A stretch of 64,000 bases of DNA from Anolis carolinensis (lineage: Eukaryota): the NCBI RefSeq assembly GCF_035594765.1, contig NC_085841.1, positions 161,247,574 to 161,311,573 of the forward strand, in the 5' to 3' direction. Below are positions 4,452 to 38,951 of this stretch, piece by piece (position 1 is the first letter of the stretch; each line of letters opens with the position of its first letter). Position numbers and translations under genes: made by a program. The notes below the pieces were generated by a model. That model worked only from the letters and a program-made list of their open reading frames with translations. It did not search any database and had not been told where the DNA came from.

Positions 4452-7400
4452 ATGCCCATCTATATACCTAGCCATCTTCCTTCCTCCCTTCCTTCCTGCC
4501 ACCTTACCTTCTTTCCTATTTTAATTAAAAGTTCATAGCATTTTTTCAATCCTTCACAACCCTACAGCGATCTATGGACCCTAAATTAAGAACCACTCTT
4601 TTAGAAGATCAGTTTTTTTCTCCTGTCGTGGATACACCAAATATAAAGAACTAGGATTTCTAGTTTCTTATATTTCCACTACTTGAACTAGATCAGTTGT
4701 TTGGACCTCAGCACTCCCCATACATTTCTGCTTTGTTTTGCTTGTCAAGAGCACTGTTAGTTTTGCAAGAGAACAATTTTTGTCATTTCCTTAAATGACC
4801 TAGACAGGTTTCACTGTGCTAAGCTAACATTCAAACTGAAAGAGGGGAATGTAATAGAGTGCTAATCTCAAATGAATCCAGTCAGGCCTGTCAAAATTTC
4901 CATAGTGCAAAGCAGCCCTTGGTAACCTATTGCTTAAAAACAAAAAAACAAAACAGCAACTCATCAGATTTTTAATTTTCAGAAAGTTAACATTTTTAAA
5001 CCTTGGAGCAGGAATTACTGGGTTCTCTTCATTGCATGTGATAGAATGCATCCTTAAATTGGGTCCTGCATATTTTTAAACAGGTGATTCCTGATTATAT
5101 GCCCTCCAATTTCTCTGATTCAGAAGGAACGGTGCCAAGACATCCTCTGCCTTTTTTAAAATTTTATTTCACGTTGTTCTGATTTTTCTTGATAGCAGCT
5201 ATCTTCAGTACAAGACACTGAATGCATGGGCTTAATTTATATACAGTCTGGTCCTCTATCCTTGCAGAACCCGTACTGCAGCTTCATCTACCTACATCTG
5301 ACAAAATACGTCCACTCTAGGAATTTTCTAGGTCCTTCAAGCAATTCTATGTTATACTTCTGCTGAAAGTTATCATAGAGCTCTGTTGGGGGAACTAGCA
5401 AATTCGTATAGAAAATATCTCCCTAGGAATTTTGTAAGACTTTTAGAGCAACTATGTAGTAACATCAGGCAGAAGTAATTCCTTTCAATAGTGTTTGCTA
5501 GTATCCACAATTTCCTTTTTCCACAGTAAGTTCAGGAATATACCCCTTGTTTCTGATTCTGGTGCATGCAAGAATCCTCCTCTTTGTTTAAACTATTTCC
5601 TTCTTTTTATATTTGTCTCAGATGTAGCGGAGGCTGGATTGTCAAGTAAACCTCTCTACAAACAGTAAGAGTACAGTAAGAGTAAGAGAGGTGACACAAA
5701 TGTCAACAAGCTGATAGTCTCCAATTGACTTGAACAATGAAAGATACTGCAGAGCTGCATATGTTACTTATTCCAGTTGTTCTCAAAGACCATAGAGTTT
5801 GTGAAATGTCAGCAGAGCTAAAAGGACATTTCTTTAATTGAAAGGAATCCCAAGGCAAAGGAGGGAGGGAAGAAGGAATATTTTGTCATCTGTTGCATTT
5901 TCTCACTCGATCTTATACATATTGTGTTACTAATGTGATGACAGGCAGCTTTCAAAAATGGTTGTTGGGCTATTATTTCTTCTGGAATCAACTTAATTGT
6001 CTGTGTTTAAGGATATCTTTCGAGGAAACCCCAGCCAACCCCCTTTCTTTCTGACAGATCCATATGGTTCTGAGTAGACAATTCTTTCTATAGATAATAC
6101 TCTAGCTTTCTCTCACAAAGAGAGAGGGAGTGAAAGAAGGGAGAGAGGGAGGGAGAGATGAACACGGAGAAAGCCAGAACCTTGGTTAAGAGATTTTACA
6201 CACACTGTCAATCCAGGCTGTCAAACTGGAATTAACTCATTAAAAATAATGGCTGGTATCCTGTTGGAAATGTATGATGTCATAAATCAACTTGGGATTC
6301 AGCTCTGTGCCTGGCTGGGGAATGTTGTCCTAGCTGCATTACCAGGACCATTGAACAGAGGAGTGAGCAGTGTGGCCATTGCAATATATACCCAATGGGT
6401 AACAGTACAGCACTCTGCAGGACAGGTTGAGCTTATTCGGGACTTATCAATTGGGTATAGGGACACCGTTTCCATGCAGTCTGGAAACAGAGACCAATGG
6501 GAGCCACACAGAGATCATCACAGGACATAAGAACACTTCTGATGAGACTCCATGGGTCTTCATTTCCACAGCACATGCAAATGGAGCCCTATACCCATTT
6601 TCAGGAGTCGGGTGTTACCCAACTCCAAACAGCCTTAAGATGAGAGAACGCAAGGGAAAAATGGGTAAGGATGTTGGGTGGCAGGTCATCCCTCAAGATG
6701 GGGAAAGATGGAACAGAGTAAGACAGTTCCCTTCACTTTTCCCCAATTTACCTCACTTTCCCCTACCCCTCCTCCCTTTGTCTGATGAAGTGACAGAGCA
6801 AGGAGAGAGGAAAATGGACTCCATCAGAGCCACAAGCCACTGGGAATCCAGAATGGAGTGCAATGGAAGGTCTTGGGTGCCTGTGCCTGGTTGGAGAGAT
6901 GCCTCCATCTTTTATGGTACTTCATTGTGCAGCAGGAGGCTCATTTCATAATGGAACACCTCACATGGTCTCCTTTGTGTGTCATCATCAGGGTTGCTTC
7001 TCCTATTGGTGAAGTATCTCCATCATCCTAAAATTGTGCAGCACATCCTGTGATGCAGGATCTCAGCCACTGTTACTTCTTGTTAATGAATTCTGTTAAT
7101 TATATTATGTGTAAGTGTTCTTATTGCAACAGAAACTCTGCAATACTCGGACTTTGATGGCCTGCAGTACAAAACAGAAGATGGAAAAAGATGGGAAGAT
7201 TGAGTAGTTAATGTGTTTGAGATGGTAGAAATGCACAACTTAACTATGCTGTTAAGGAGTAAAAAAAACCTGATTATTTTTAAAACTGGCAACTTTTTCA
7301 CAATTTTTAAACAAGAGCAGAAAAATAACTCTTGAAGGTTTTAAAATTTAGTTAAATTCATGATAGTAAGTTGGCAAGGTAGTAAATTAACATGTAATTG

Positions 7401-9233: not shown

Positions 9234-10501
9234 TAAGACCTAGTAATTACCACCAGCTTTACTGCTCCCTTTACTTCAGCAGTTTTCGGCTGCTTGTTGA
9301 AAAGGTTTTCTTGTTGAAAAGATTAAAAACTAAGAGGCGTAAATAAGATTGGGACTGAATTACCATATGTACGTGTCTATATACTGTCAAAAATATGGGG
9401 CACTTATGATGGCTCATGCCACTGTAAAATGTCTCCCGTGTCATTCAGTGACAAAATAAATTACATCTTTTGAGCAGAACTGTACATTTGTTTTCCTGTC
9501 CTGATATCTACATCTGGGAGTTTAGCACTGTCTCTTGTTTTAGCAGTTTCCTGACTCTTCAGCATGAGCAAAGATTCCCAAATTCTGATCCATGGAAATT
9601 GCCAAAGGCAGATCTAATTTCCTCTCCCTAATATTTAGAAAAGCCACTGTAGTTGAGTAAATGGATTTTAGAACTTTAGAAATGTCATACAGCAAATTTT
9701 GGGAGGAGATATGCACCATAGCCCCCAACATTTCACAGAGGGAAACTAGTACATACAGTAATGGCAGAATGTGGTAAGACTGGAAAAGAGGAAGGGCACA
9801 AGCACTAATAGGAGAGGCTTCAACACTTTGGGTTTGCCTGAGTCAATAGAAAGGCAAGATTATACTCCTTTCACCTCTCCTTCCCCTAAGTTAATTGAGT
9901 GCTAACTATTTTCATCACTTTCCACTGTCTGCAGCGATTTGAATAAGATGAGGACAAAAAAAGGAAGGTGGGCAAAGGAAATAAAAACCAGGACATTTTA
10001 AAAGCAGCTGAAAAGATAGAACAGCAGAGGATTTATTGGAACTATTCCTGCTAAAACTGTACGTTTGGAGGGTAAGATACAGTTTGATTCTAATAATATT
10101 TTCTGACAAATGTCAGAATTGTTGTTTGTTATGCTGAAAGACCACAGTGGGATAGTGCTGTAAGTTTGTGGCTTAGTGCTGTAAATTTGTGGCTATAAAC
10201 CAAAGAGAAGTAGAGGAGAGGTAGAAATCACAAGAAAAAAATGAATGAGGAGGATACAGTGAGGAAAAATTATTGCTTAATTCTCCAAGCACTGTGTGAG
10301 CAACAATCAGATTAAAAGGTGCTTCATTGTAGATCATCAAAAGTAATGCTATACCAGGGTATATTTTACAGTACTATAAATGGCAGCACAGCGTAATGGT
10401 TTGAGCATTGGATAATGATTCTGGAGACTGGGGTTTGAATTTCTACTTGGCCATACATACTCACTAGTTCATCTGATGCAAGTAACACTCTCTCAGTCTC
10501 A

Positions 10502-32000: not shown

Positions 32001-32175
32001 ATTTAAGGAAAGGATAGGTGGCATATCTGATTCTCCCATGAATATTTCTTCATTTTTACAACAGGCTTTAAGATAACTTTCCTGAGACTCACAGATCTAT
32101 GCCAGTAGCACATAAACTCAATCTTCCTCGGAAATAACCTAATGGAGTTACTAAGGAGGAATGTGTGTTCGTTAC

Positions 32176-33166
32176 CTGTAATTTCTTTCAGAGGCTCCAT
32201 CAATGGTAGTCCAACTCTTTCTATTGCCACAATGTGGTTCTCCTTCAGGTATTGTTGCAAAGCCGGATGGATGACTTTCTGACACACAAAAACACCAACA
32301 CCATCCTTTACTATTTGCTTACCTACATTAAGCAACTGAGCTAAGACTACTGCTTCTAAATAAACTCCGTGTGGGATGACAATGACTCCTTCTCCATTGT
32401 CAGATAAGTCTCCAGACAGAGACATACTGAAAAGTACCATCTTGATCATGCCTGAAGTATCTCTTTTGATTGGAGGTGTATTTCTTAGGTCCACTTCTGG
32501 CACTTCTATCAGAAGTCCAGGATATACAGCAGAATCCAAAACTTGCTTGTTCTTTACAGGGATATAAAGACACTTTCCTAGAGTCATTTGAGTATTGATG
32601 TTGTGTGGAATTGTAAATAGAAAAGCCTCTAAAACCAAAATGCTGATGTGATTGGCTTCCATTCTGCTAAGCCTGCAGGCAGGTTTGCTGGTTATTATAC
32701 TACGGACCAGATCCAGGGGGATCTTGGAACTGCTAAAATCCACCTGCATTCTACAACCGCACGTTTCAGACGCAAGATAGTCAATGCATAGGCTCAAAAG
32801 GTGTTGGCTGATTTTAATGAAAGTGCAAGGGGTGATGTTCAGGCCTTGACATTTTTCAAGCAGGCTGCAGCAAAAGATGGCCATAAACAAGCCGCAGTCA
32901 CTGAAGCGTGCGAGATGGTTCTGCACAGAGGCTGTCAGAAGCTTTAACACCGGATGAGTGACTGAAAGGCCACCGAGCAAAGCTGAAGCCTGCGACGTGG
33001 TGCGCACATATCCACCCACACCGTTGTGCAGTTGCTTAAGCCTCCCTGTGGGGCCATAGCAGGACCTCACCATTTTAGCAAAAACTGACAGAGCATGGCA
33101 AAGGGTCTCCTTAGCTAAAGGTTCGCTGGTACATAAGGAAGGCTTTTTGAGATCAACACGAGACAT
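32176..33166 (-). CDS. MKKS: MKKS first coding exon (991 coding nt; exon begins at acceptor 33539)
   Basis: True start MSRVDLKKPSLCTSEPL at 33166; SCYGPTGRLKQL, FSDCGLF and CQKVIHP motifs of the group II chaperonin-like BBS6; donor ACAG|gtaac at 32176/32175. Four exons total 1713 nt = 570 aa + stop. Confidence 0.97.
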
Positions 33167-33368
33167 CTTTCCAGATAAAATCCCAGTCAAGACTTAGATG
33201 CATCTCATGTCTATAAACTGCTTTTTAATGAATGATATACACACAAGCGAGAACAAGGCTGCTGCATTCTTTTGTGGTCAAGGCAAAGCGTATGGACACA
33301 GCCGTTTTTATCCGATATTTGACAAAATCGCTATATGTGTGGTCTGTATGATGTTGGCAGAAATGGGG

Positions 33369-33521
33369 TCATTCATCAAGACCTTTTGATTTAATGTCCA
33401 ACCCTGATTTAGCAGAGGACTTTGCAGCTCTTTGTACAAGGTAGGTCCCCAAATGAACACCAACAAAGGTGAGTCCAGCCACAAGTAGCCAGTTCTTCCT
33501 AATCCAGCTGATTTTCTTCAT
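33369..33521 (-). CDS. MKKS upstream ORF 2 microprotein (uMKKS2-like), 50 aa
   Basis: MKKISWIRKNWLLVAGLTFVGVHLGTYLVQRAAKSSAKSGLDIKSKGLDE*, translated by hand. ATG is 18 nt inside the exon (acceptor ttaattgcag|33539), -3A context. Closely matches the human MKKS uORF2 peptide as I recall it. Confidence 0.9.
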   Translation of the reverse strand: MKKISWIRKNWLLVAGLTFVGVHLGTYLVQRAAKSSAKSGLDIKSKGLDE

Positions 33522-36500
33522 TGTTCAAGTGCAATCTATCTGCAATTAAAAAAAAAAATCATGAAATTACAGTTATAGTTTTTCTTAAAAAAAACCTGTG
33601 GGTAAATTGAACAGCCTGCTCTTCTACATATGGCATCTCCACATAGTGGACATTCAAAATGGTTGTCAGTTTTCTTTCCATACAAAATTCTTTATGCTAT
33701 TATGTCAGTTCACATCTTTACACAACAATACACACCAAACCGTCGCATCTTTTAGACTGTCATTCAGTTTGGGCTACCTGAAAATTGTTTCAGGAAATGC
33801 ATGTAAAATGACCTGGTATGCAATAACTTTAGAAGAGATGTAAATCAAGGGTGGGAAGCTTCACATTTTTTAAAATTAGGATTCTGCCAAAATGGTCATG
33901 TGAATCATGGGATAACATTGGATTAAAAGGGTCAAATCCTTCTAGTTGTAGTAATAGAAGAAATAAGGCTGACTAGCATAGACTTTAATGGCTTTTTGAA
34001 GAACATCACATTTAGGAAAAACAGGATTTGACATTCTCCTTGTTTTACTCTTTCTTGGTCTATTAGTTCTTATGCTCCCATGTTCTTAAAATATGGGAAT
34101 TTTTTTTTGGAAGTGAGAGGACTCAAAAGTCTGCAATCAAAATAAAACAAACATATGCAAAATGCAATCTTCAACTCCCACTATAGCATAGTCACAGAAC
34201 CAATACGAAATGGAATACTACACTATGAGATAAAAAATGTGATATCTTTGGTTATTGCTGAGTGACAATACCCATGAGTCCTCATCACTGGCAATGCCAG
34301 TCAGATGGCAAATGGAGCCCAACAACATCTGGAGGGCTACATTTTCCCATACTATACATTTTAATCTTAACTTCAATGTTAACCACACAGATACATCTGG
34401 TGAGAAAATGAGAAAGGAACTTGGTGGTTGCCCCTAGGCTTTGGAATTATCTTCCCAGAGAACACTCTCTATTTTAATTCCACAGACAGGTGAAAATAAT
34501 ATGTTAAAAATATCCATTTTATTGTATTTTATGATTATGTGTTTTAATTGTGTTATGCCCCATCTCGAACCATGAGGGAAAGTGGGTAACAAAAAAAAAG
34601 TATTATTATTGTTATTATTATTATTCAACTGACCCTTGAGGACTGAATGTACAAGGCCCATGCCACCTAAACAATGTGCTGGATTTTCTATCTGCTTTTT
34701 TGTTGTGCGATTTAAAAACATAAATCATTTTAAAATGATCGCCTTTTAATTTCTGTATTTTGTGAATTTTAACTATGTGATTTTATCAATTGCCAGCTGC
34801 CTTGAATACCAAACTGGGTTAAAAGTGGGACAAATTATTATTATAATTTATTTATTGTTATTTAATAATAAATAACAGTAAGTACTACTAATATTAGTAA
34901 TTGTACTTATACAGCAATTCAACCAAAATCAATTGAAACATTAAAAGTTCTAAGATATCTCAAAATAAGTGTTTTTAATCGTTTGAAACATAATTCCATT
35001 ATAACAAGACATTTAACAGCAATACATTATCACGTTAACAGCTAATTTTCACTTTCATTCCAAACAACAACTCAAACCTAACTTATAGCCTAGACATTTG
35101 ATAGTTCTCTATTTTCTTCCAGCCTCAGGCTGACTAAATATGTAATAACATCCACAAAAGAACACGGTCAATAGGATTCCATATGTGGATAATGAATATC
35201 ATGTGCACCTGTGAGGCCATCTGTCTATGACTATCCAAATACAGGCACTCCTCGAGTTACAAACATCTAACTTTCAAATGACTCACAGTTAAGAACAGGG
35301 GTGTGACAACAGGAAGTGAGAAAAATCTATCCCTAAGAAGGTAAACTAATTCCTGAAGTAATTATTATCATGGGGAAAAGGTGTCTCCGGTGGCTTTATC
35401 ACCAATCAATGTCTCCACAACAAGCCAATTTTTTCAAAATCCAATTATCAGAGGGACAGAGAGTGAAGTGAAATCTTCTGAATGGAGGCAAACACCACAG
35501 GGGTGTTACCCCTTCCCTATGCTATCTAAAACATGCATGTATGTGTCTGTTTATGCGCGCGCGCACACACACACACACAGACACACAAACACACACACGA
35601 AAGACAATATTTATGAGATAATAGATCAGGCTCTTTTTCCCCCTCAATTTATGCTGACATGCCCAAGTTTAATCTTCCAGATGAGCTGAAAGGGCTGCAA
35701 GCTTGTAGTTAAATGGGGAAAAAACCATTGGTAACTATCCCTCTATGCTCAAACAGACTAGGGGAAGGGGGGGGGCACCTCCACCTTTGACAATAATCTC
35801 TAAAGCTTGAACCTAAGAAAGCTAAGAAAAATGTATTTTGGAAAGGCAACAAGTATGAGCACCATTTTAATAGCTTTAGTGTGTGTTGGTATGAATAATG
35901 CAGTTAAGGCTTTATTTACAGCTTCACAGTGAAAGCAGATGGCAAACTACAGCTCCACTGCATCTTTTTCATTGCAGATGTGAAGCCGTGCCTGAATCTA
36001 GTTTTGTCACAAGTATGAAAACATACAGGTGAAAATGGGTAAAGCCTATGAATTGAAAACTATATTTCAATCATAAAAGCAAACGCTGAAATGTATCTGT
36101 ATCTGTGTGCACATGGGTATGTGTGCTTAAAATTTGATAATGCCTTAACTTAAAGGCAGCCAGCTCCCATGTTTGAATGTACATCAGCAACTGAAAAAGG
36201 AAAAGCTAGCAAACTGGCTGATTCACATTTGGAAGGGATGTAATTGCCCACTTTCTCTTTAACAGTTCCTTATCCCAATACATTTTTCTAATTAAAGATG
36301 AAAAAATGGAAACCAGGATTGTTAAGAGCACAGAAGTTATACTTGTAGCCTGATCCAAGCTAACAGTTTTGCCTCACTATAGCAAACATCAAAAACAGAA
36401 TGACCACATGTACTCATGTACAAGTCTAAAATTGTTAGTCAACCCCAAAAAAGTTTCCTTTTTTATGGTCCAATGGAAGTAGTATACCTTACCCCTTATC

Positions 36501-37791
36501 AAAAAAGGAACAACTTCCTTCCATGATGGCAAAAGACAAAAGCTGAGTCTGTCTTGGGAAAACTTAAAAGAAGAATCAACTCATTCTATTGTCTCTGCCT
36601 TTATGAATGACTGGATGAGGAAATGACAGTTGAGGGCCATTCCCCTTTCTGTGGAATGACCCTCAACTTATCCATGGGTCAGAACAAAATCCATAATTTT
36701 GGTCCCAGATCTTGCCCTCGACTTATATATAAGGTTGATGTATATACAAGTATATATAGAACTCAGTTTTCAGGACACTTCAAAATTTGTTTCATGTAAC
36801 AAGGGTAGGCAAAGTGGAATCCAAAAGAGGTGGCCCATCTATTAAATGGCATCCCTTCCATTTAATATTTTCAAAAAAAGAAAGTGGACGGCTGGCCATG
36901 AATGACTTTCTTTTTAATTTTTTAGTAGTCTGCATAGCCCCGAGTCAAAAACTGGGCCCTTAGACCCACTGAAGTTGCCCCTCCTGCTGCAAAATGTGCC
37001 CTTTATTACTGATAATGGACTAGCTAATTTTGCCTACTGTGTTCACAGCAGGATTCCTAATTTGAAGTCAGCCACTATACGGCATGGCACCAGCTCTCAA
37101 AGGCTTTGTTATGCTGCTGCAGGTTTTGGTACTGCAAGCAAAATCATCCAAGAGTGGGAAGCACAGCAGAAAAGTCTCCCAACTTGTCAATTAAATGTCC
37201 TGACTATTCATTTATTTACACCATGGCTAGACAGTGGAACCCACCAATTTACTGGCCATACTTCAGCCCTGCTGCCTGGTCACTACAATGAGAAGATATT
37301 TTTTTGTTTTGCTTTTTAAAACAAGGTTTAAGGTGTTGTGGTTCCAGGAAGCAGAATTATCCTTAAAAACTAGTCGCTCCTCTTGTCTGCCTTGTTCATA
37401 TCTCAAAAAAGCAGTGAAGTATTAGAAAAACAAAAGAATTTCAAATACTGGAAAAAAGAATGGCTTGGGGAGAGTTAAACAGACTAACTTATTAAAAGAA
37501 AGCTCTGTATCTAAAAATATGGTAACCTTTTACAGAGTGTGTAAAGTAAGAAAAAGGAGACATTGTAACTACTGGTTTTGATATAAAAAAATAAAATATT
37601 TTCCTTATTATTAGGAAAGTAAATATAACAGATGCGTTTTAGAAAGGAGGAATATTGTGTATAAGTTAGCATGCTGCAGCCAGAGAAGAGCAGAAAATAA
37701 GCTGAAATGAATGGGGCAGATAGAAAAGATGTACTGTTGATTGTGTGGTTTGTTGTGTGTGTGTGTATACATACATACATATACATATATA

Positions 37792-37792
<1 letters not shown>

Positions 37793-37835
<43 letters not shown>
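37793..37835. repeat. (CA)n microsatellite
   Basis: About 21 units; source of the CVCVCV ORFs in the track. Confidence 0.95.
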
Positions 37836-37844
<9 letters not shown>

Positions 37845-38286
37845 GTCGGATGTCTATTTTTTGTAACATAAGTATTAAGTGTGATACTAATATTTATTTT
37901 AAAAAATTAAATAAAAAAGTAGTGATTCTGCTGTCTCCCAAGCTGTAAATTTGGCAGCCAGGACGATAGAAGCCTCAGTGGGAGTTTCAATTATGATCAA
38001 AGGGCTGGATGTGTGCTGTCTGTGATTCATGCAGATTTACTCCCACAAAATAAAAATATAACTATAAGCCTGTTTTAGAAAGGCATAATCACCTGGAAGA
38101 TTGGTAGGATCTGATGCAAAAGAATGTCATACATGGCTAACTGGGGCAAGGGGAAACAGAGACGGTCTGCCATTATATGATGCTGGGGATAAAAAGAAAG
38201 ATTGGTCTCGGGTTTAGCATTATAACAAAGGTCTTTTACATTCATATCACTTCTCTCATTTTGTTCTTGCTGCAGCAAGAACTTAC

Positions 38287-38525
38287 CTCTCAGTTACTCT
38301 GCAGCACTGTGTGGTTATTTTCCTTTATTTTGTTTCTCTGCTTGCAGCACGTATGTCACGATTCCAGGCTCGGGGACAAAGTCATCTGTCTTGGGTTGGA
38401 AAACAGGATGGGACTTCATGTTATACCAGCCCAAGTGCACCAAGACAAGGCTCGTTCCCATAACAATAATAACTCTGTAGTTCTTCCAAATTGTTTTAAG
38501 GCCCATTGCGTGTGTTGGCCTCTAC
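38287..38525 (-). other. MKKS: MKKS leader exon carrying uORF1 (239 nt)
   Basis: Acceptor cttctttacatag|38525 and consensus donor GAG|gtaagt at 38287/38286 bracket the 63-aa ORF. Confidence 0.85.
38315..38506 (-). CDS. MKKS upstream ORF 1 microprotein (uMKKS1-like), 63 aa
   Basis: MGLKTIWKNYRVIIVMGTSLVLVHLGWYNMKSHPVFQPKTDDFVPEPGIVTYVLQAEKQNKGK*; strong Kozak (GCAATGG); single hydrophobic segment; matches the human MKKS uORF1 peptide (63 aa) as I recall it. Confidence 0.9.
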   Translation of the reverse strand: MGLKTIWKNYRVIIVMGTSLVLVHLGWYNMKSHPVFQPKTDDFVPEPGIVTYVLQAEKQNKGK

Positions 38526-38951
38526 CTATGTAAAGAAGTTGAGAGTCTTGAATACGGTCTACTGAACATAGTTTAAGCATACTGCCTCTTAACTGTACAG
38601 TAATAATAAAAAAAAACTCAGAATACTTAAATAACGCCTGAATATTTGCATTTTGGCAGCCTCATCCTAACAATATATTTTCAAAAGCACAAACAATCAT
38701 GACCTGCCATAGTATTTTATGAATGCAGCTTTGATTACCCATCAGCAGGAAGAATTACTGAATGGCAATTTATACCTCTTCAAGCCAAACTGTCATCACT
38801 ATCTAGCATGGTTATAGTAATATTAGGGAATTGAGAGATACCAACCTTTGATTCATGTCTTCCTATTATCTCTTCAAAAAATAAAAAATAGGTAAGAATA
38901 CAAAAGCACAAAAGAATCCTTCAGAGGGCTTTCACTGAAGTGGTCAGTCTG

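What the first reader, a model, noticed from the sequence alone, without database searches (positions are those of the whole stretch)
33369..38506. uORF1 and uORF2 look like ancient paralogs created by exon duplication
Seen: uORF1 IWKNYRVIIVMGTSLVLVHLGWY aligns with uORF2 IRKNW--LLVAGLTFVGVHLGTY. Shared features are I-x-KN-aromatic, V-x-G and V-x-VHLG-x-Y, with a His at the end of the predicted TM helix. Each ATG sits almost the same distance after its own splice acceptor (19 and 18 nt). Inference: one microprotein exon was tandemly duplicated, and the products may form a heterodimer or bind the same membrane complex through the HLGxY motif. I do not know of this being described.
Basis: partly seen in the sequence, partly recalled or inferred. 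Interest (0 to 1): 0.8.

Follow-up and report, generated by a model that had tools for sequence, protein, structure and literature searches.

The report
Known MKKS leader microproteins, possibly paralogs
The two small ORFs are the already described mitochondrial membrane microproteins uMKKS1 and uMKKS2 in the leader of a lizard MKKS/BBS6 gene, and their likeness to each other is real but too weak to prove that one arose by copying the other.

Summary
The MKKS start codon follows at 33166. They are orthologs of the published uORF microproteins uMKKS1 and uMKKS2 (NCBI LOC128706665 and LOC128706666). uMKKS1 occurs from cartilaginous fish to birds. uMKKS2 reaches lamprey and hagfish.

RNA contigs from three studies confirm the intron joining the two exons, and so the uORF2 acceptor. 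Two contigs read straight through the proposed uORF1 acceptor.

The similarity is confined to the N-terminal anchor helix and aligns best without a gap:
- Pairwise score 45, reached by 2/5000 full shuffles and 36/5000 segment shuffles.
- hhalign gives 71% probability with narrow families, falling to 20% and 9% as sampling widens.
- Architecture-preserving column permutations give p about 0.06-0.10 for local alignment, and about 0.005 for a register anchored at the start Met.

HLGxY is not conserved: uORF1 is mostly HWGW[YF], and fish uORF2 is HLxTW. What both families keep is W-x9-G-x6-H-x3-aromatic.

A 42-kb lamprey locus holds only a uORF2-like ORF.

Verdict: known microproteins. An ancient tandem duplication is plausible (about 0.5) but unproven. 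The heterodimer idea was not tested.

The parts
38315..38506 (-). uORF1, the uMKKS1 ortholog (63 aa plus stop). It has an N-terminal anchor helix and then a polar tail with the conserved EPGIV-x-Y stretch.
   Evidence: ORF list. Orthologs are named 'LOC128706665 homolog' or 'PNAS-117', with E down to 1e-37, from the chimaera Callorhinchus to birds, amphibians and teleosts. Helix 2-32.
38287..38525 (-). The donor is confirmed (last exon base 38287). The acceptor proposed at AG 38527-38526 is not confirmed.
   Evidence: Joint 33539|38287 in runs X4, X6 and X12. Contigs of X4 and X6 continue unspliced past 38526, to 38604 and beyond 38700. Sequence read.
33540..38286 (-). Intron of 4747 nt between the uORF1 exon and the uORF2/MKKS exon, GT..AG on the minus strand. 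It holds a high-copy repeat and CA microsatellites.
   Evidence: Joint table, 'skips 4747', ends CT..AC on the + strand, 3 runs from 3 studies.
33369..33521 (-). uORF2, the uMKKS2 ortholog (50 aa plus stop). It has an N-terminal anchor helix and then a basic Ser/Lys-rich tail.
   Evidence: ORF list. Orthologs are named 'LOC128706666 homolog', with 98% identity to Anolis sagrei. Exhaustive profile search gave 30 hits, which include teleosts, a ray, a lamprey and a hagfish. Helix 3-47.
33167..33539 (-). 5' part of the exon that carries uORF2 and runs on into the MKKS coding sequence. The exon starts at 33539, 18 nt before the uORF2 ATG.
   Evidence: The RNA contig joint ends at 33539, and contigs continue to 33100 and beyond. 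Sequence read.
32171..33166 (-). First coding exon of MKKS/BBS6 (group II chaperonin-like protein), ATG at 33166. The 3' end given here is approximate.
   Evidence: Open frame 32003..33190 starting MSRVDLKKPSLC. 49% identity over 314 aa to the Cpn60_TCP1 gene that follows uORF2 in the ray locus L002.

Best explanation
The two ORFs are the lizard (Anolis-like) orthologs of the known MKKS-leader microproteins uMKKS1 (63 aa) and uMKKS2 (50 aa).

How each one works:
- Each is a single-pass membrane protein. It has a short basic N-terminal flank with a Trp, an 18-19-residue moderately hydrophobic helix, and a polar tail.
- This is the layout of a signal-anchored mitochondrial membrane protein. Published work places both in mitochondrial membrane fractions. 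It places uMKKS1 at the outer membrane, with an effect on respiration.

How they relate to each other:
- The likeness is restricted to the anchor helix, in one ungapped register counted from the start Met: W6/7, G16/17, H23/24 and an aromatic at 27/28.
- I read this as most likely the remnant of one very old tandem duplication of a microprotein ORF within the locus. It would date to no later than the common ancestor of jawed vertebrates, with uORF2 the older type, because cyclostomes have it.
- After that the tails diverged completely.

Shown: identity, orthology, age, exon junction, shared spaced motif.
Inferred: common descent, membrane topology.
The confidence of 0.5 is for the duplication. 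The identification as uMKKS1 and uMKKS2 is near certain.
For: Identity:
- Named orthologs at E 1e-19 to 1e-37.
- Literature on uMKKS1/2 and micro-MKKS63.
- The same gene order, uORF1 then uORF2 then MKKS, in the ray locus L002: 6966, 10001 and 10416.

Exon structure: spliced contigs in 3 studies.

Similarity:
- Pairwise score 45, reached by 2/5000 full and 36/5000 segment shuffles.
- hhalign P 3.7e-5, probability 71%, over 29 ungapped columns with sauropsid-plus-shark uORF1 against amniote uORF2.
- Met-anchored profile score 10.6 bits, reached by 25/5000 segment permutations and 18/5000 TM-only permutations.
- Full column permutations reach the hhalign score in 3/300 and 2/150 trials.
- The uORF2 HMM ranks uORF1 first among 1681 window ORFs after itself, at E 0.0097. 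It also ranks the ray uORF1 first among the non-self ORFs of two other loci, at E 0.49.
- The spaced motif is in 105/119 uORF1 and 65/72 uORF2 sequences and in no other window ORF.
- The slowly evolving Callorhinchus uORF1 gives the highest cross-score, 14.1 bits.

Age:
- uORF2 is present in Lampetra and Myxine.
- No uORF1-like ORF was found in 42 kb around the lamprey ORF.
Against: - Support shrinks as sampling widens. hhalign probability falls to 19.8% and then 9.4%.
- Permutations that keep the flank/TM/tail architecture reach the hhalign score in 17/300 and 15/150 trials.
- Deep-branching uORF2 members score near null against the uORF1 HMM: lamprey 3.3 bits, hagfish 0.2, ray 2.0, teleosts below 0. 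The shuffled 95th percentile is 4.2.
- The uORF1 HMM ranks uORF2 only third in the window, at E 1.9.
- The tails share nothing. There is no nucleotide-level similarity (51/500 shuffles reach the best match), and third codon positions match in 7/28.
- The language-model neighbours of uORF2 do not include uORF1. The non-self neighbours listed for uORF1 were arthropod clusters and named families, and none was identified as uORF2.
- The Met-anchored test and the spaced motif were defined after the alignment had been seen.
Confidence: 0.5

Rival explanations
1. Convergence under shared constraints. The two microproteins arose independently in the MKKS leader or its neighbourhood. They look alike because both are N-terminally anchored mitochondrial membrane proteins of the same helix length. 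An interfacial Trp on one side, an aromatic on the other, a small residue in mid-helix and flanking basic residues are what such anchors need. A His could be selected in both if they contact the same partner.
For: - The similarity is limited to the anchor helix.
- Architecture-preserving permutations reach the hhalign score in 6-10% of trials.
- The most divergent uORF2 lineages are no closer to uORF1 than shuffled sequences are.
- The helix-packing motifs differ. uORF1 has G17-x3-G21, while uORF2 has G16 and G21 five residues apart.
- uORF1 shows possible arthropod look-alikes by language-model features, scores 0.93 and 0.92. If real, these would give it a history separate from uORF2.
Against: - Four conserved identical or like residues fall in the same register from the Met in two ORFs that sit next to each other in one mRNA. 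The anchored permutation test gives p about 0.004-0.005.
- His is rare in membrane helices (general knowledge).
- Independent birth of two like-built, like-targeted ORFs 3-5 kb apart is less economical than one duplication.
Confidence: 0.35
2. Chance resemblance between two hydrophobic helices, picked out because the reader was looking for similarity. There is no shared origin and no shared function.
For: - Local profile alignment is not significant against the strict null, p about 0.06-0.10.
- In the lizard, uORF1 carries the minority HLG variant, which inflates the pairwise match seen in this window.
- The 19/18-nt spacing is not conserved in the ray or the lamprey.
Against: - Pairwise and full-permutation tests give p of 0.0004 to 0.013.
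- In one direction each is the other's best natural-ORF match in the window, E 0.0097.
- The spaced motif is kept in about 90% of both families across more than 450 million years.
- Both are reported in mitochondrial membrane fractions (PMC11837024).
Confidence: 0.15

Closest known systems
uMKKS1 and uMKKS2 (Akimoto et al. 2013, as summarised in PMC11837024). Also known as micro-MKKS63 / Q9HB66 / LOC128706665, and V9GZ13 / LOC128706666.
   Same: Same lengths (63 and 50 aa). Same positions: one in the exon before the MKKS start exon and one in that exon. They are direct orthologs by sequence. Reported properties: translated, mitochondrial membrane fraction, repress MKKS translation. uMKKS1 is at the outer membrane and is needed for normal respiration in microglial cells. 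It is also computationally linked to a respiratory-complex component or assembly factor.
   Different: Nothing structural. This is the squamate copy. The papers I could read do not say that the two are related to each other. The 2013 paper itself is not in the library.
Polycistronic tandem smORF genes such as tarsal-less/polished rice (from general knowledge; named in PMC4568590 as a paralog/ortholog benchmark).
   Same: Several short ORFs lie in one transcript.
   Different: The tarsal-less repeats are nearly identical 11-aa peptides. Here the two ORFs share about 30% identity over 25-29 residues only, sit in different exons, and precede a long main ORF.
SERCA-regulating transmembrane micropeptide family: phospholamban, sarcolipin, myoregulin, DWORF (general knowledge).
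   Same: Single-pass micropeptides whose kinship is visible only in the membrane helix and which bind one common partner. This is the model for 'paralogs that contact the same complex'.
   Different: Members of that family are separate genes with a demonstrated shared target. No shared partner is known for uMKKS1 and uMKKS2, and no sequence relation to that family was seen. Pfam and PDB searches were blank.
Signal-anchored mitochondrial outer-membrane proteins and mitochondrial microproteins such as mitoregulin (PMC11837024).
   Same: Short N-terminal flank, moderately hydrophobic helix (mean Kyte-Doolittle 1.6-1.7), basic residues after the helix, and mitochondrial membrane location in the literature.
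   Different: No sequence homology was detected, and topology and import route were not tested here.

Membership tests
uMKKS1 (LOC128706665 homologs, 'PNAS-117') | Full-length sequence similarity to named orthologs | tested here: met
   63-78% identity over 100% of the length to squamate, turtle, bird, crocodilian and Callorhinchus proteins. E 1e-19 to 1e-26 for the single sequence and down to 1e-37 for the profile.
uMKKS1 (LOC128706665 homologs, 'PNAS-117') | Encoded in the MKKS 5' leader, in the exon before the one with the MKKS start codon | tested here: met
   The ORF at 38315-38506(-) is spliced (38287 to 33539) to the exon holding the MKKS ATG at 33166. The order is the same in the ray locus L002.
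uMKKS2 (LOC128706666 homologs) | Full-length sequence similarity to named orthologs | tested here: met
   98% identity to Anolis sagrei and 60-90% to other squamates, a turtle and mammals. The profile search reaches teleosts, Narcine, Lampetra and Myxine.
uMKKS2 (LOC128706666 homologs) | Lies in the same exon as the MKKS start codon, upstream of it | tested here: met
   ORF at 33369-33521(-), exon start 33539 from RNA joints, MKKS ATG at 33166.
uMKKS1/uMKKS2 | Mitochondrial membrane localisation and repression of MKKS translation | not testable with these tools
   Literature only (PMC11837024, PMC13577902). The sequences fit a single N-terminal anchor helix.
   hhalign probability is 71%, 19.8% and 9.4% as sampling widens. 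Full column permutations give p about 0.01. Architecture-preserving permutations give p about 0.06-0.10. The Met-anchored register gives p about 0.005. No library of unrelated TM microprotein families was available.
   uORF1 has HWGWY in 66, HWGWF in 21 and HLGWY in 14 of 119 sequences. uORF2 has HLGTY in 33 of 72, and teleosts have HL[TSA]TW. Lamprey has HGTFY and hagfish has HLVLY. A looser motif, W-x9-G-x6-H-x3-aromatic, is kept in 105/119 and 65/72.
   The lamprey locus L001 (42 kb, next to JAG1) has one uORF2-like ORF and no uORF1-like ORF by tblastn or hmmsearch. This is one species and one locus, and MKKS itself was not found within 10 kb. The hagfish locus is not on record. Invertebrate genomes could not be searched.

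The most novel reading that the evidence does not exclude
uMKKS1 and uMKKS2 descend from one ancestral signal-anchored microprotein gene. That gene still exists as a single uORF2-like copy beside JAG1 in lamprey, possibly as a stand-alone gene with its own poly(A) signal. It was duplicated in tandem in the stem of jawed vertebrates and became, or already was, part of the MKKS leader. The conserved W...G-x6-H-x3-aromatic face of the helix would then mark a common binding surface for one mitochondrial partner.
Probability: 0.4. Interest if true: 0.45.

Novelty: already known. Interest (0 to 1): 0.3.

Why it matters
uMKKS1 has recently been reported as the dominant protein product of the MKKS locus in human brain and as a factor in mitochondrial respiration (PMC13577902). 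Any clue to its partners is therefore useful. If uMKKS2 is its paralog, the four co-conserved helix positions would be the first rational targets for mutagenesis. They are the Trp, the Gly, the His and the aromatic four residues after the His. The two proteins should then also be tested together for redundancy, which could mask knockout phenotypes. It would also be a rare vertebrate case of a polycistronic leader built by duplication of a small ORF. As it stands, the finding mostly re-identifies known microproteins, and the evolutionary claim remains a hypothesis.

Tried and rejected
- Pfam scan of both proteins: no family even at E 10.
- PDB sequence search with both family profiles: only chance hits at E 0.08 or worse.
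- ESM Atlas look-alikes. For uORF2 nothing scored above 0.85.
- Nucleotide comparison of the two exons: the best match, 12/13 nt over the I-x-K-N codons, is reached by 51/500 shuffles.
- Reversed-profile control: score 11.3 against 20.4 observed.
- Hagfish locus: not on record.
- Lamprey MKKS: not found within 10 kb downstream of the uORF2-like ORF.
- The original 2013 paper: not held.
- Three literature searches found no statement that uMKKS1 and uMKKS2 are paralogs.
- Dimer prediction: no tool for it. Single-chain models only show helices.
Full report
**What is there**

On the minus strand the window carries the 5' part of an MKKS/BBS6 gene of a non-human vertebrate. The uORF2 protein is 98% identical to that of Anolis sagrei.
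- A 63-aa ORF lies at 38315-38506 and a 50-aa ORF at 33369-33521.
- The chaperonin ORF starts at 33166 (MSRVDLKKPSLC...) in the same exon as the second small ORF.
- An AG ends 19 nt before the first ATG (at 38526) and 18 nt before the second (at 33540).

**RNA evidence**

I laid contigs of four probable RNA runs from four studies on 33100-38700. Three of them, from three studies, contain the junction 33539|38287.
- The junction removes 4747 nt, with GT..AG on the minus strand.
- This confirms the donor after uORF1 and the acceptor before uORF2.
- The proposed acceptor in front of uORF1 was not seen. The contig of run X4 continues unspliced to 38604. The contig of run X6 continues past 38700 by about 295 further letters.
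- Either the uORF1 exon is a long first exon in these transcripts, or these contigs keep an intron.

**Identity**

Both proteins have named orthologs.
- uORF1 matches 'LOC128706665 homolog' or 'PNAS-117' proteins. It shows 63-78% identity over the full length in squamates, turtles, birds, the alligator and the chimaera Callorhinchus. With a profile it also reaches amphibians and many teleosts.
- uORF2 matches 'LOC128706666 homolog' proteins of squamates, a turtle and mammals.
- These are the published uORF products uMKKS1 (63 aa, Q9HB66) and uMKKS2 (50 aa, V9GZ13). They are reported as translated, present in mitochondrial membrane fractions, and repressing translation of MKKS (PMC11837024).
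- A 2026 study calls the first one micro-MKKS63. [quoted passage not shown]
- A computed interactome links it to a component or assembly factor of a respiratory complex (bioRxiv 10.1101/2024.10.01.615885).
None of the papers found in three searches says that the two are related to each other. The 2013 paper itself is not held.

**How old each ORF is**

An exhaustive profile search with the uORF2 family gave 30 hits. Cluster look-up names salmonids, Conger, Poecilia, Liparis, the ray Narcine, a sparrow, the lamprey Lampetra fluviatilis and the hagfish Myxine glutinosa.
- In the ray locus L002 the order is uORF1 (6966-7157), uORF2 (10001-10153), then the Cpn60_TCP1 gene from 10416. Both ORFs therefore predate the split of cartilaginous and bony vertebrates.
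- In the lamprey locus L001 (42 kb) a uORF2-like ORF lies downstream of JAG1.
- Neither tblastn with all family members nor hmmsearch over all six-frame ORFs finds a uORF1-like ORF anywhere in that locus.
- No MKKS-like ORF appears in the 10 kb after it. An AATAAA follows its stop by about 90 nt.
- This fits a single uORF2-type copy in cyclostomes, but it rests on one locus of one species. The hagfish locus is not on record.

**How alike the two are**

- Smith-Waterman (BLOSUM62) gives an ungapped alignment of 25 residues with score 45. It is reached by 2 of 5000 full shuffles and by 36 of 5000 shuffles that keep flank, helix and tail apart.
- Profile against profile, the result depends on sampling:
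  - 12 sauropsid-plus-shark uORF1 sequences against 38 amniote uORF2 sequences give hhalign probability 71%, P 3.7e-5, over 29 ungapped columns.
  - 119 uORF1 against 41 uORF2 sequences give 19.8%, P 1.1e-3.
  - 119 uORF1 against 72 uORF2 sequences, now including fish and cyclostomes, give 9.4%, P 3.4e-3.
- Column permutation of the uORF2 alignment reaches the observed score in 3/300 and 2/150 trials when all columns are mixed. When columns are mixed only within flank, helix and tail, it reaches the score in 17/300 and 15/150 trials.
- Against the uORF1 HMM, amniote uORF2 sequences score a median 5.9 bits, where the shuffled 95th percentile is 4.2. Lamprey (3.3), hagfish (0.2), ray (2.0) and teleosts (below 0) do not stand out.
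- In the other direction the best cross-scores come from Callorhinchus (14.1 bits) and this lizard (12.8 bits). Both carry the minority HLG variant.
- Among the 1681 stop-to-stop ORFs of the window, the uORF2 HMM ranks uORF1 first after itself, at E 0.0097. The uORF1 HMM ranks uORF2 third, at E 1.9.
- If the alignment is required to be ungapped and anchored near the start Met (four offsets allowed), the profile score is 10.6 bits. It is reached by 25/5000 segment permutations and 18/5000 helix-only permutations. That statistic follows from the duplication idea, but I chose it after seeing the alignment.

**The motif**

HLGxY as written is not conserved.
- uORF1 is HWGWY in 66, HWGWF in 21 and HLGWY in 14 of 119 sequences.
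- uORF2 is HLGTY in 33 of 72. Teleosts have HL[T/S/A]TW, the ray HSVTY, lamprey HGTFY and hagfish HLVLY.
- What both families keep is a Trp six or seven residues from the Met, a Gly ten residues later, a His seven after the Gly, and an aromatic four after the His. This W-x9-G-x6-H-x3-aromatic pattern is in 105/119 and 65/72 sequences and in no other ORF of the window.
- The mid-helix small-residue patterns differ: G17-x3-G21 in uORF1 against G16 and G21 in uORF2.
- The tails have nothing in common, and the DNA shows no significant similarity.
- The equal ATG-to-acceptor distance does not hold in the ray (about 17 and 46 nt). In lamprey it is 21 nt.

**Structure**

- The most hydrophobic 19-residue window is 12-30 in uORF1 and 11-29 in uORF2, with mean Kyte-Doolittle values of 1.57 and 1.71.
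- AlphaFold models give one long N-terminal helix in each: 2-32 in uORF1, where a low-confidence tail follows, and 3-47 in uORF2.
- No Pfam family and no solved relative exist.

**Reading**

- The identification as uMKKS1 and uMKKS2 is secure.
- Mechanism: each is best read as a signal-anchored mitochondrial membrane microprotein whose translation also throttles MKKS. This rests on the literature plus the sequence layout.
  - For common descent: adjacency in one transcript since at least the jawed-vertebrate ancestor, identical architecture, the shared register of four conserved residues, and several tests at p of 0.0004 to 0.013.
  - Against: the decay of the profile signal with broader sampling, p of 0.06-0.10 under the strictest null, null-like scores of the deepest uORF2 lineages, and the failure of the named motif.
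- I put an ancient tandem duplication at about 0.5, convergence under shared anchor or partner constraints at about 0.35, and chance at about 0.15.
- The heterodimer idea could not be tested.

**Limits**

- All three word-indexed protein searches and the one exhaustive search were used. The arthropod look-alikes of uORF1 suggested by language-model features (0.93 and 0.92) therefore could not be fetched.
- Vertebrate and invertebrate genomes can only be reached here through exact-protein look-ups.
- No human sequence or contig was fetched or compared, no masked stretch was touched, and exons were not joined.

Noticed in passing
L001:32196-32336 (Lampetra fluviatilis, GCA_965212235.1): The lamprey uORF2-like ORF lies downstream of JAG1. 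An acceptor sits 21 nt before its ATG and an AATAAA about 90 nt after its stop. No MKKS-like ORF is found within 10 kb downstream, where a reverse-transcriptase-like element sits at about 38.4-40.5 kb. It may be a stand-alone microprotein gene there.
   Followed up: partly
window 38315-38506 (-), protein P0001: By language-model features, the nearest non-self clusters of uORF1 are two arthropod 'hypothetical protein' clusters of 58 and 76 aa (scores 0.93 and 0.92, with 198 and 188 shared features). This is a possible invertebrate family of uMKKS1. The sequences could not be fetched.
   Followed up: no
window 38416-38580 (-): RNA contigs read through the proposed uORF1 acceptor. If that exon really extends upstream, an out-of-frame ATG at 38580 opens a 54-aa ORF that overlaps the uORF1 start and would compete with it.
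   Followed up: partly
window 33194-33208 (-): A four-codon mini-uORF (Met-Arg-Cys-Ile-stop) lies between uORF2 and the MKKS ATG. An ATTAAA also lies at about 33227-33232, in the stretch where human MKKS is reported to have alternative poly(A) sites in its leader.
   Followed up: no
window 35157-35530: Contig depth jumps to thousands in all four runs inside the intron, with many loose ends. This looks like a high-copy, probably transcribed, interspersed repeat. CA/TG microsatellites lie at about 35550-35650 and 37700-37850.
   Followed up: no
proteins P0174 (Zonotrichia), P0186 and P0187 (teleost models): The sparrow uORF2 is unusually divergent (HIGSM, with no aromatic after the His), which hints at relaxed constraint in birds. 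Two teleost gene models fuse uORF1 and uORF2 into one predicted protein, probably an annotation artefact of the spliced leader.
   Followed up: no
proteins P0005, P0011, P0013, P0055, P0075 (bird uMKKS1 isoform models): Bird isoform models share the residues RCQFA (RCQCA in P0013) directly before the Met and differ further upstream. This fits a splice junction about 16-19 nt before the uORF1 ATG, with alternative upstream exons. It is indirect support for the acceptor that the lizard RNA contigs did not show.
   Followed up: partly
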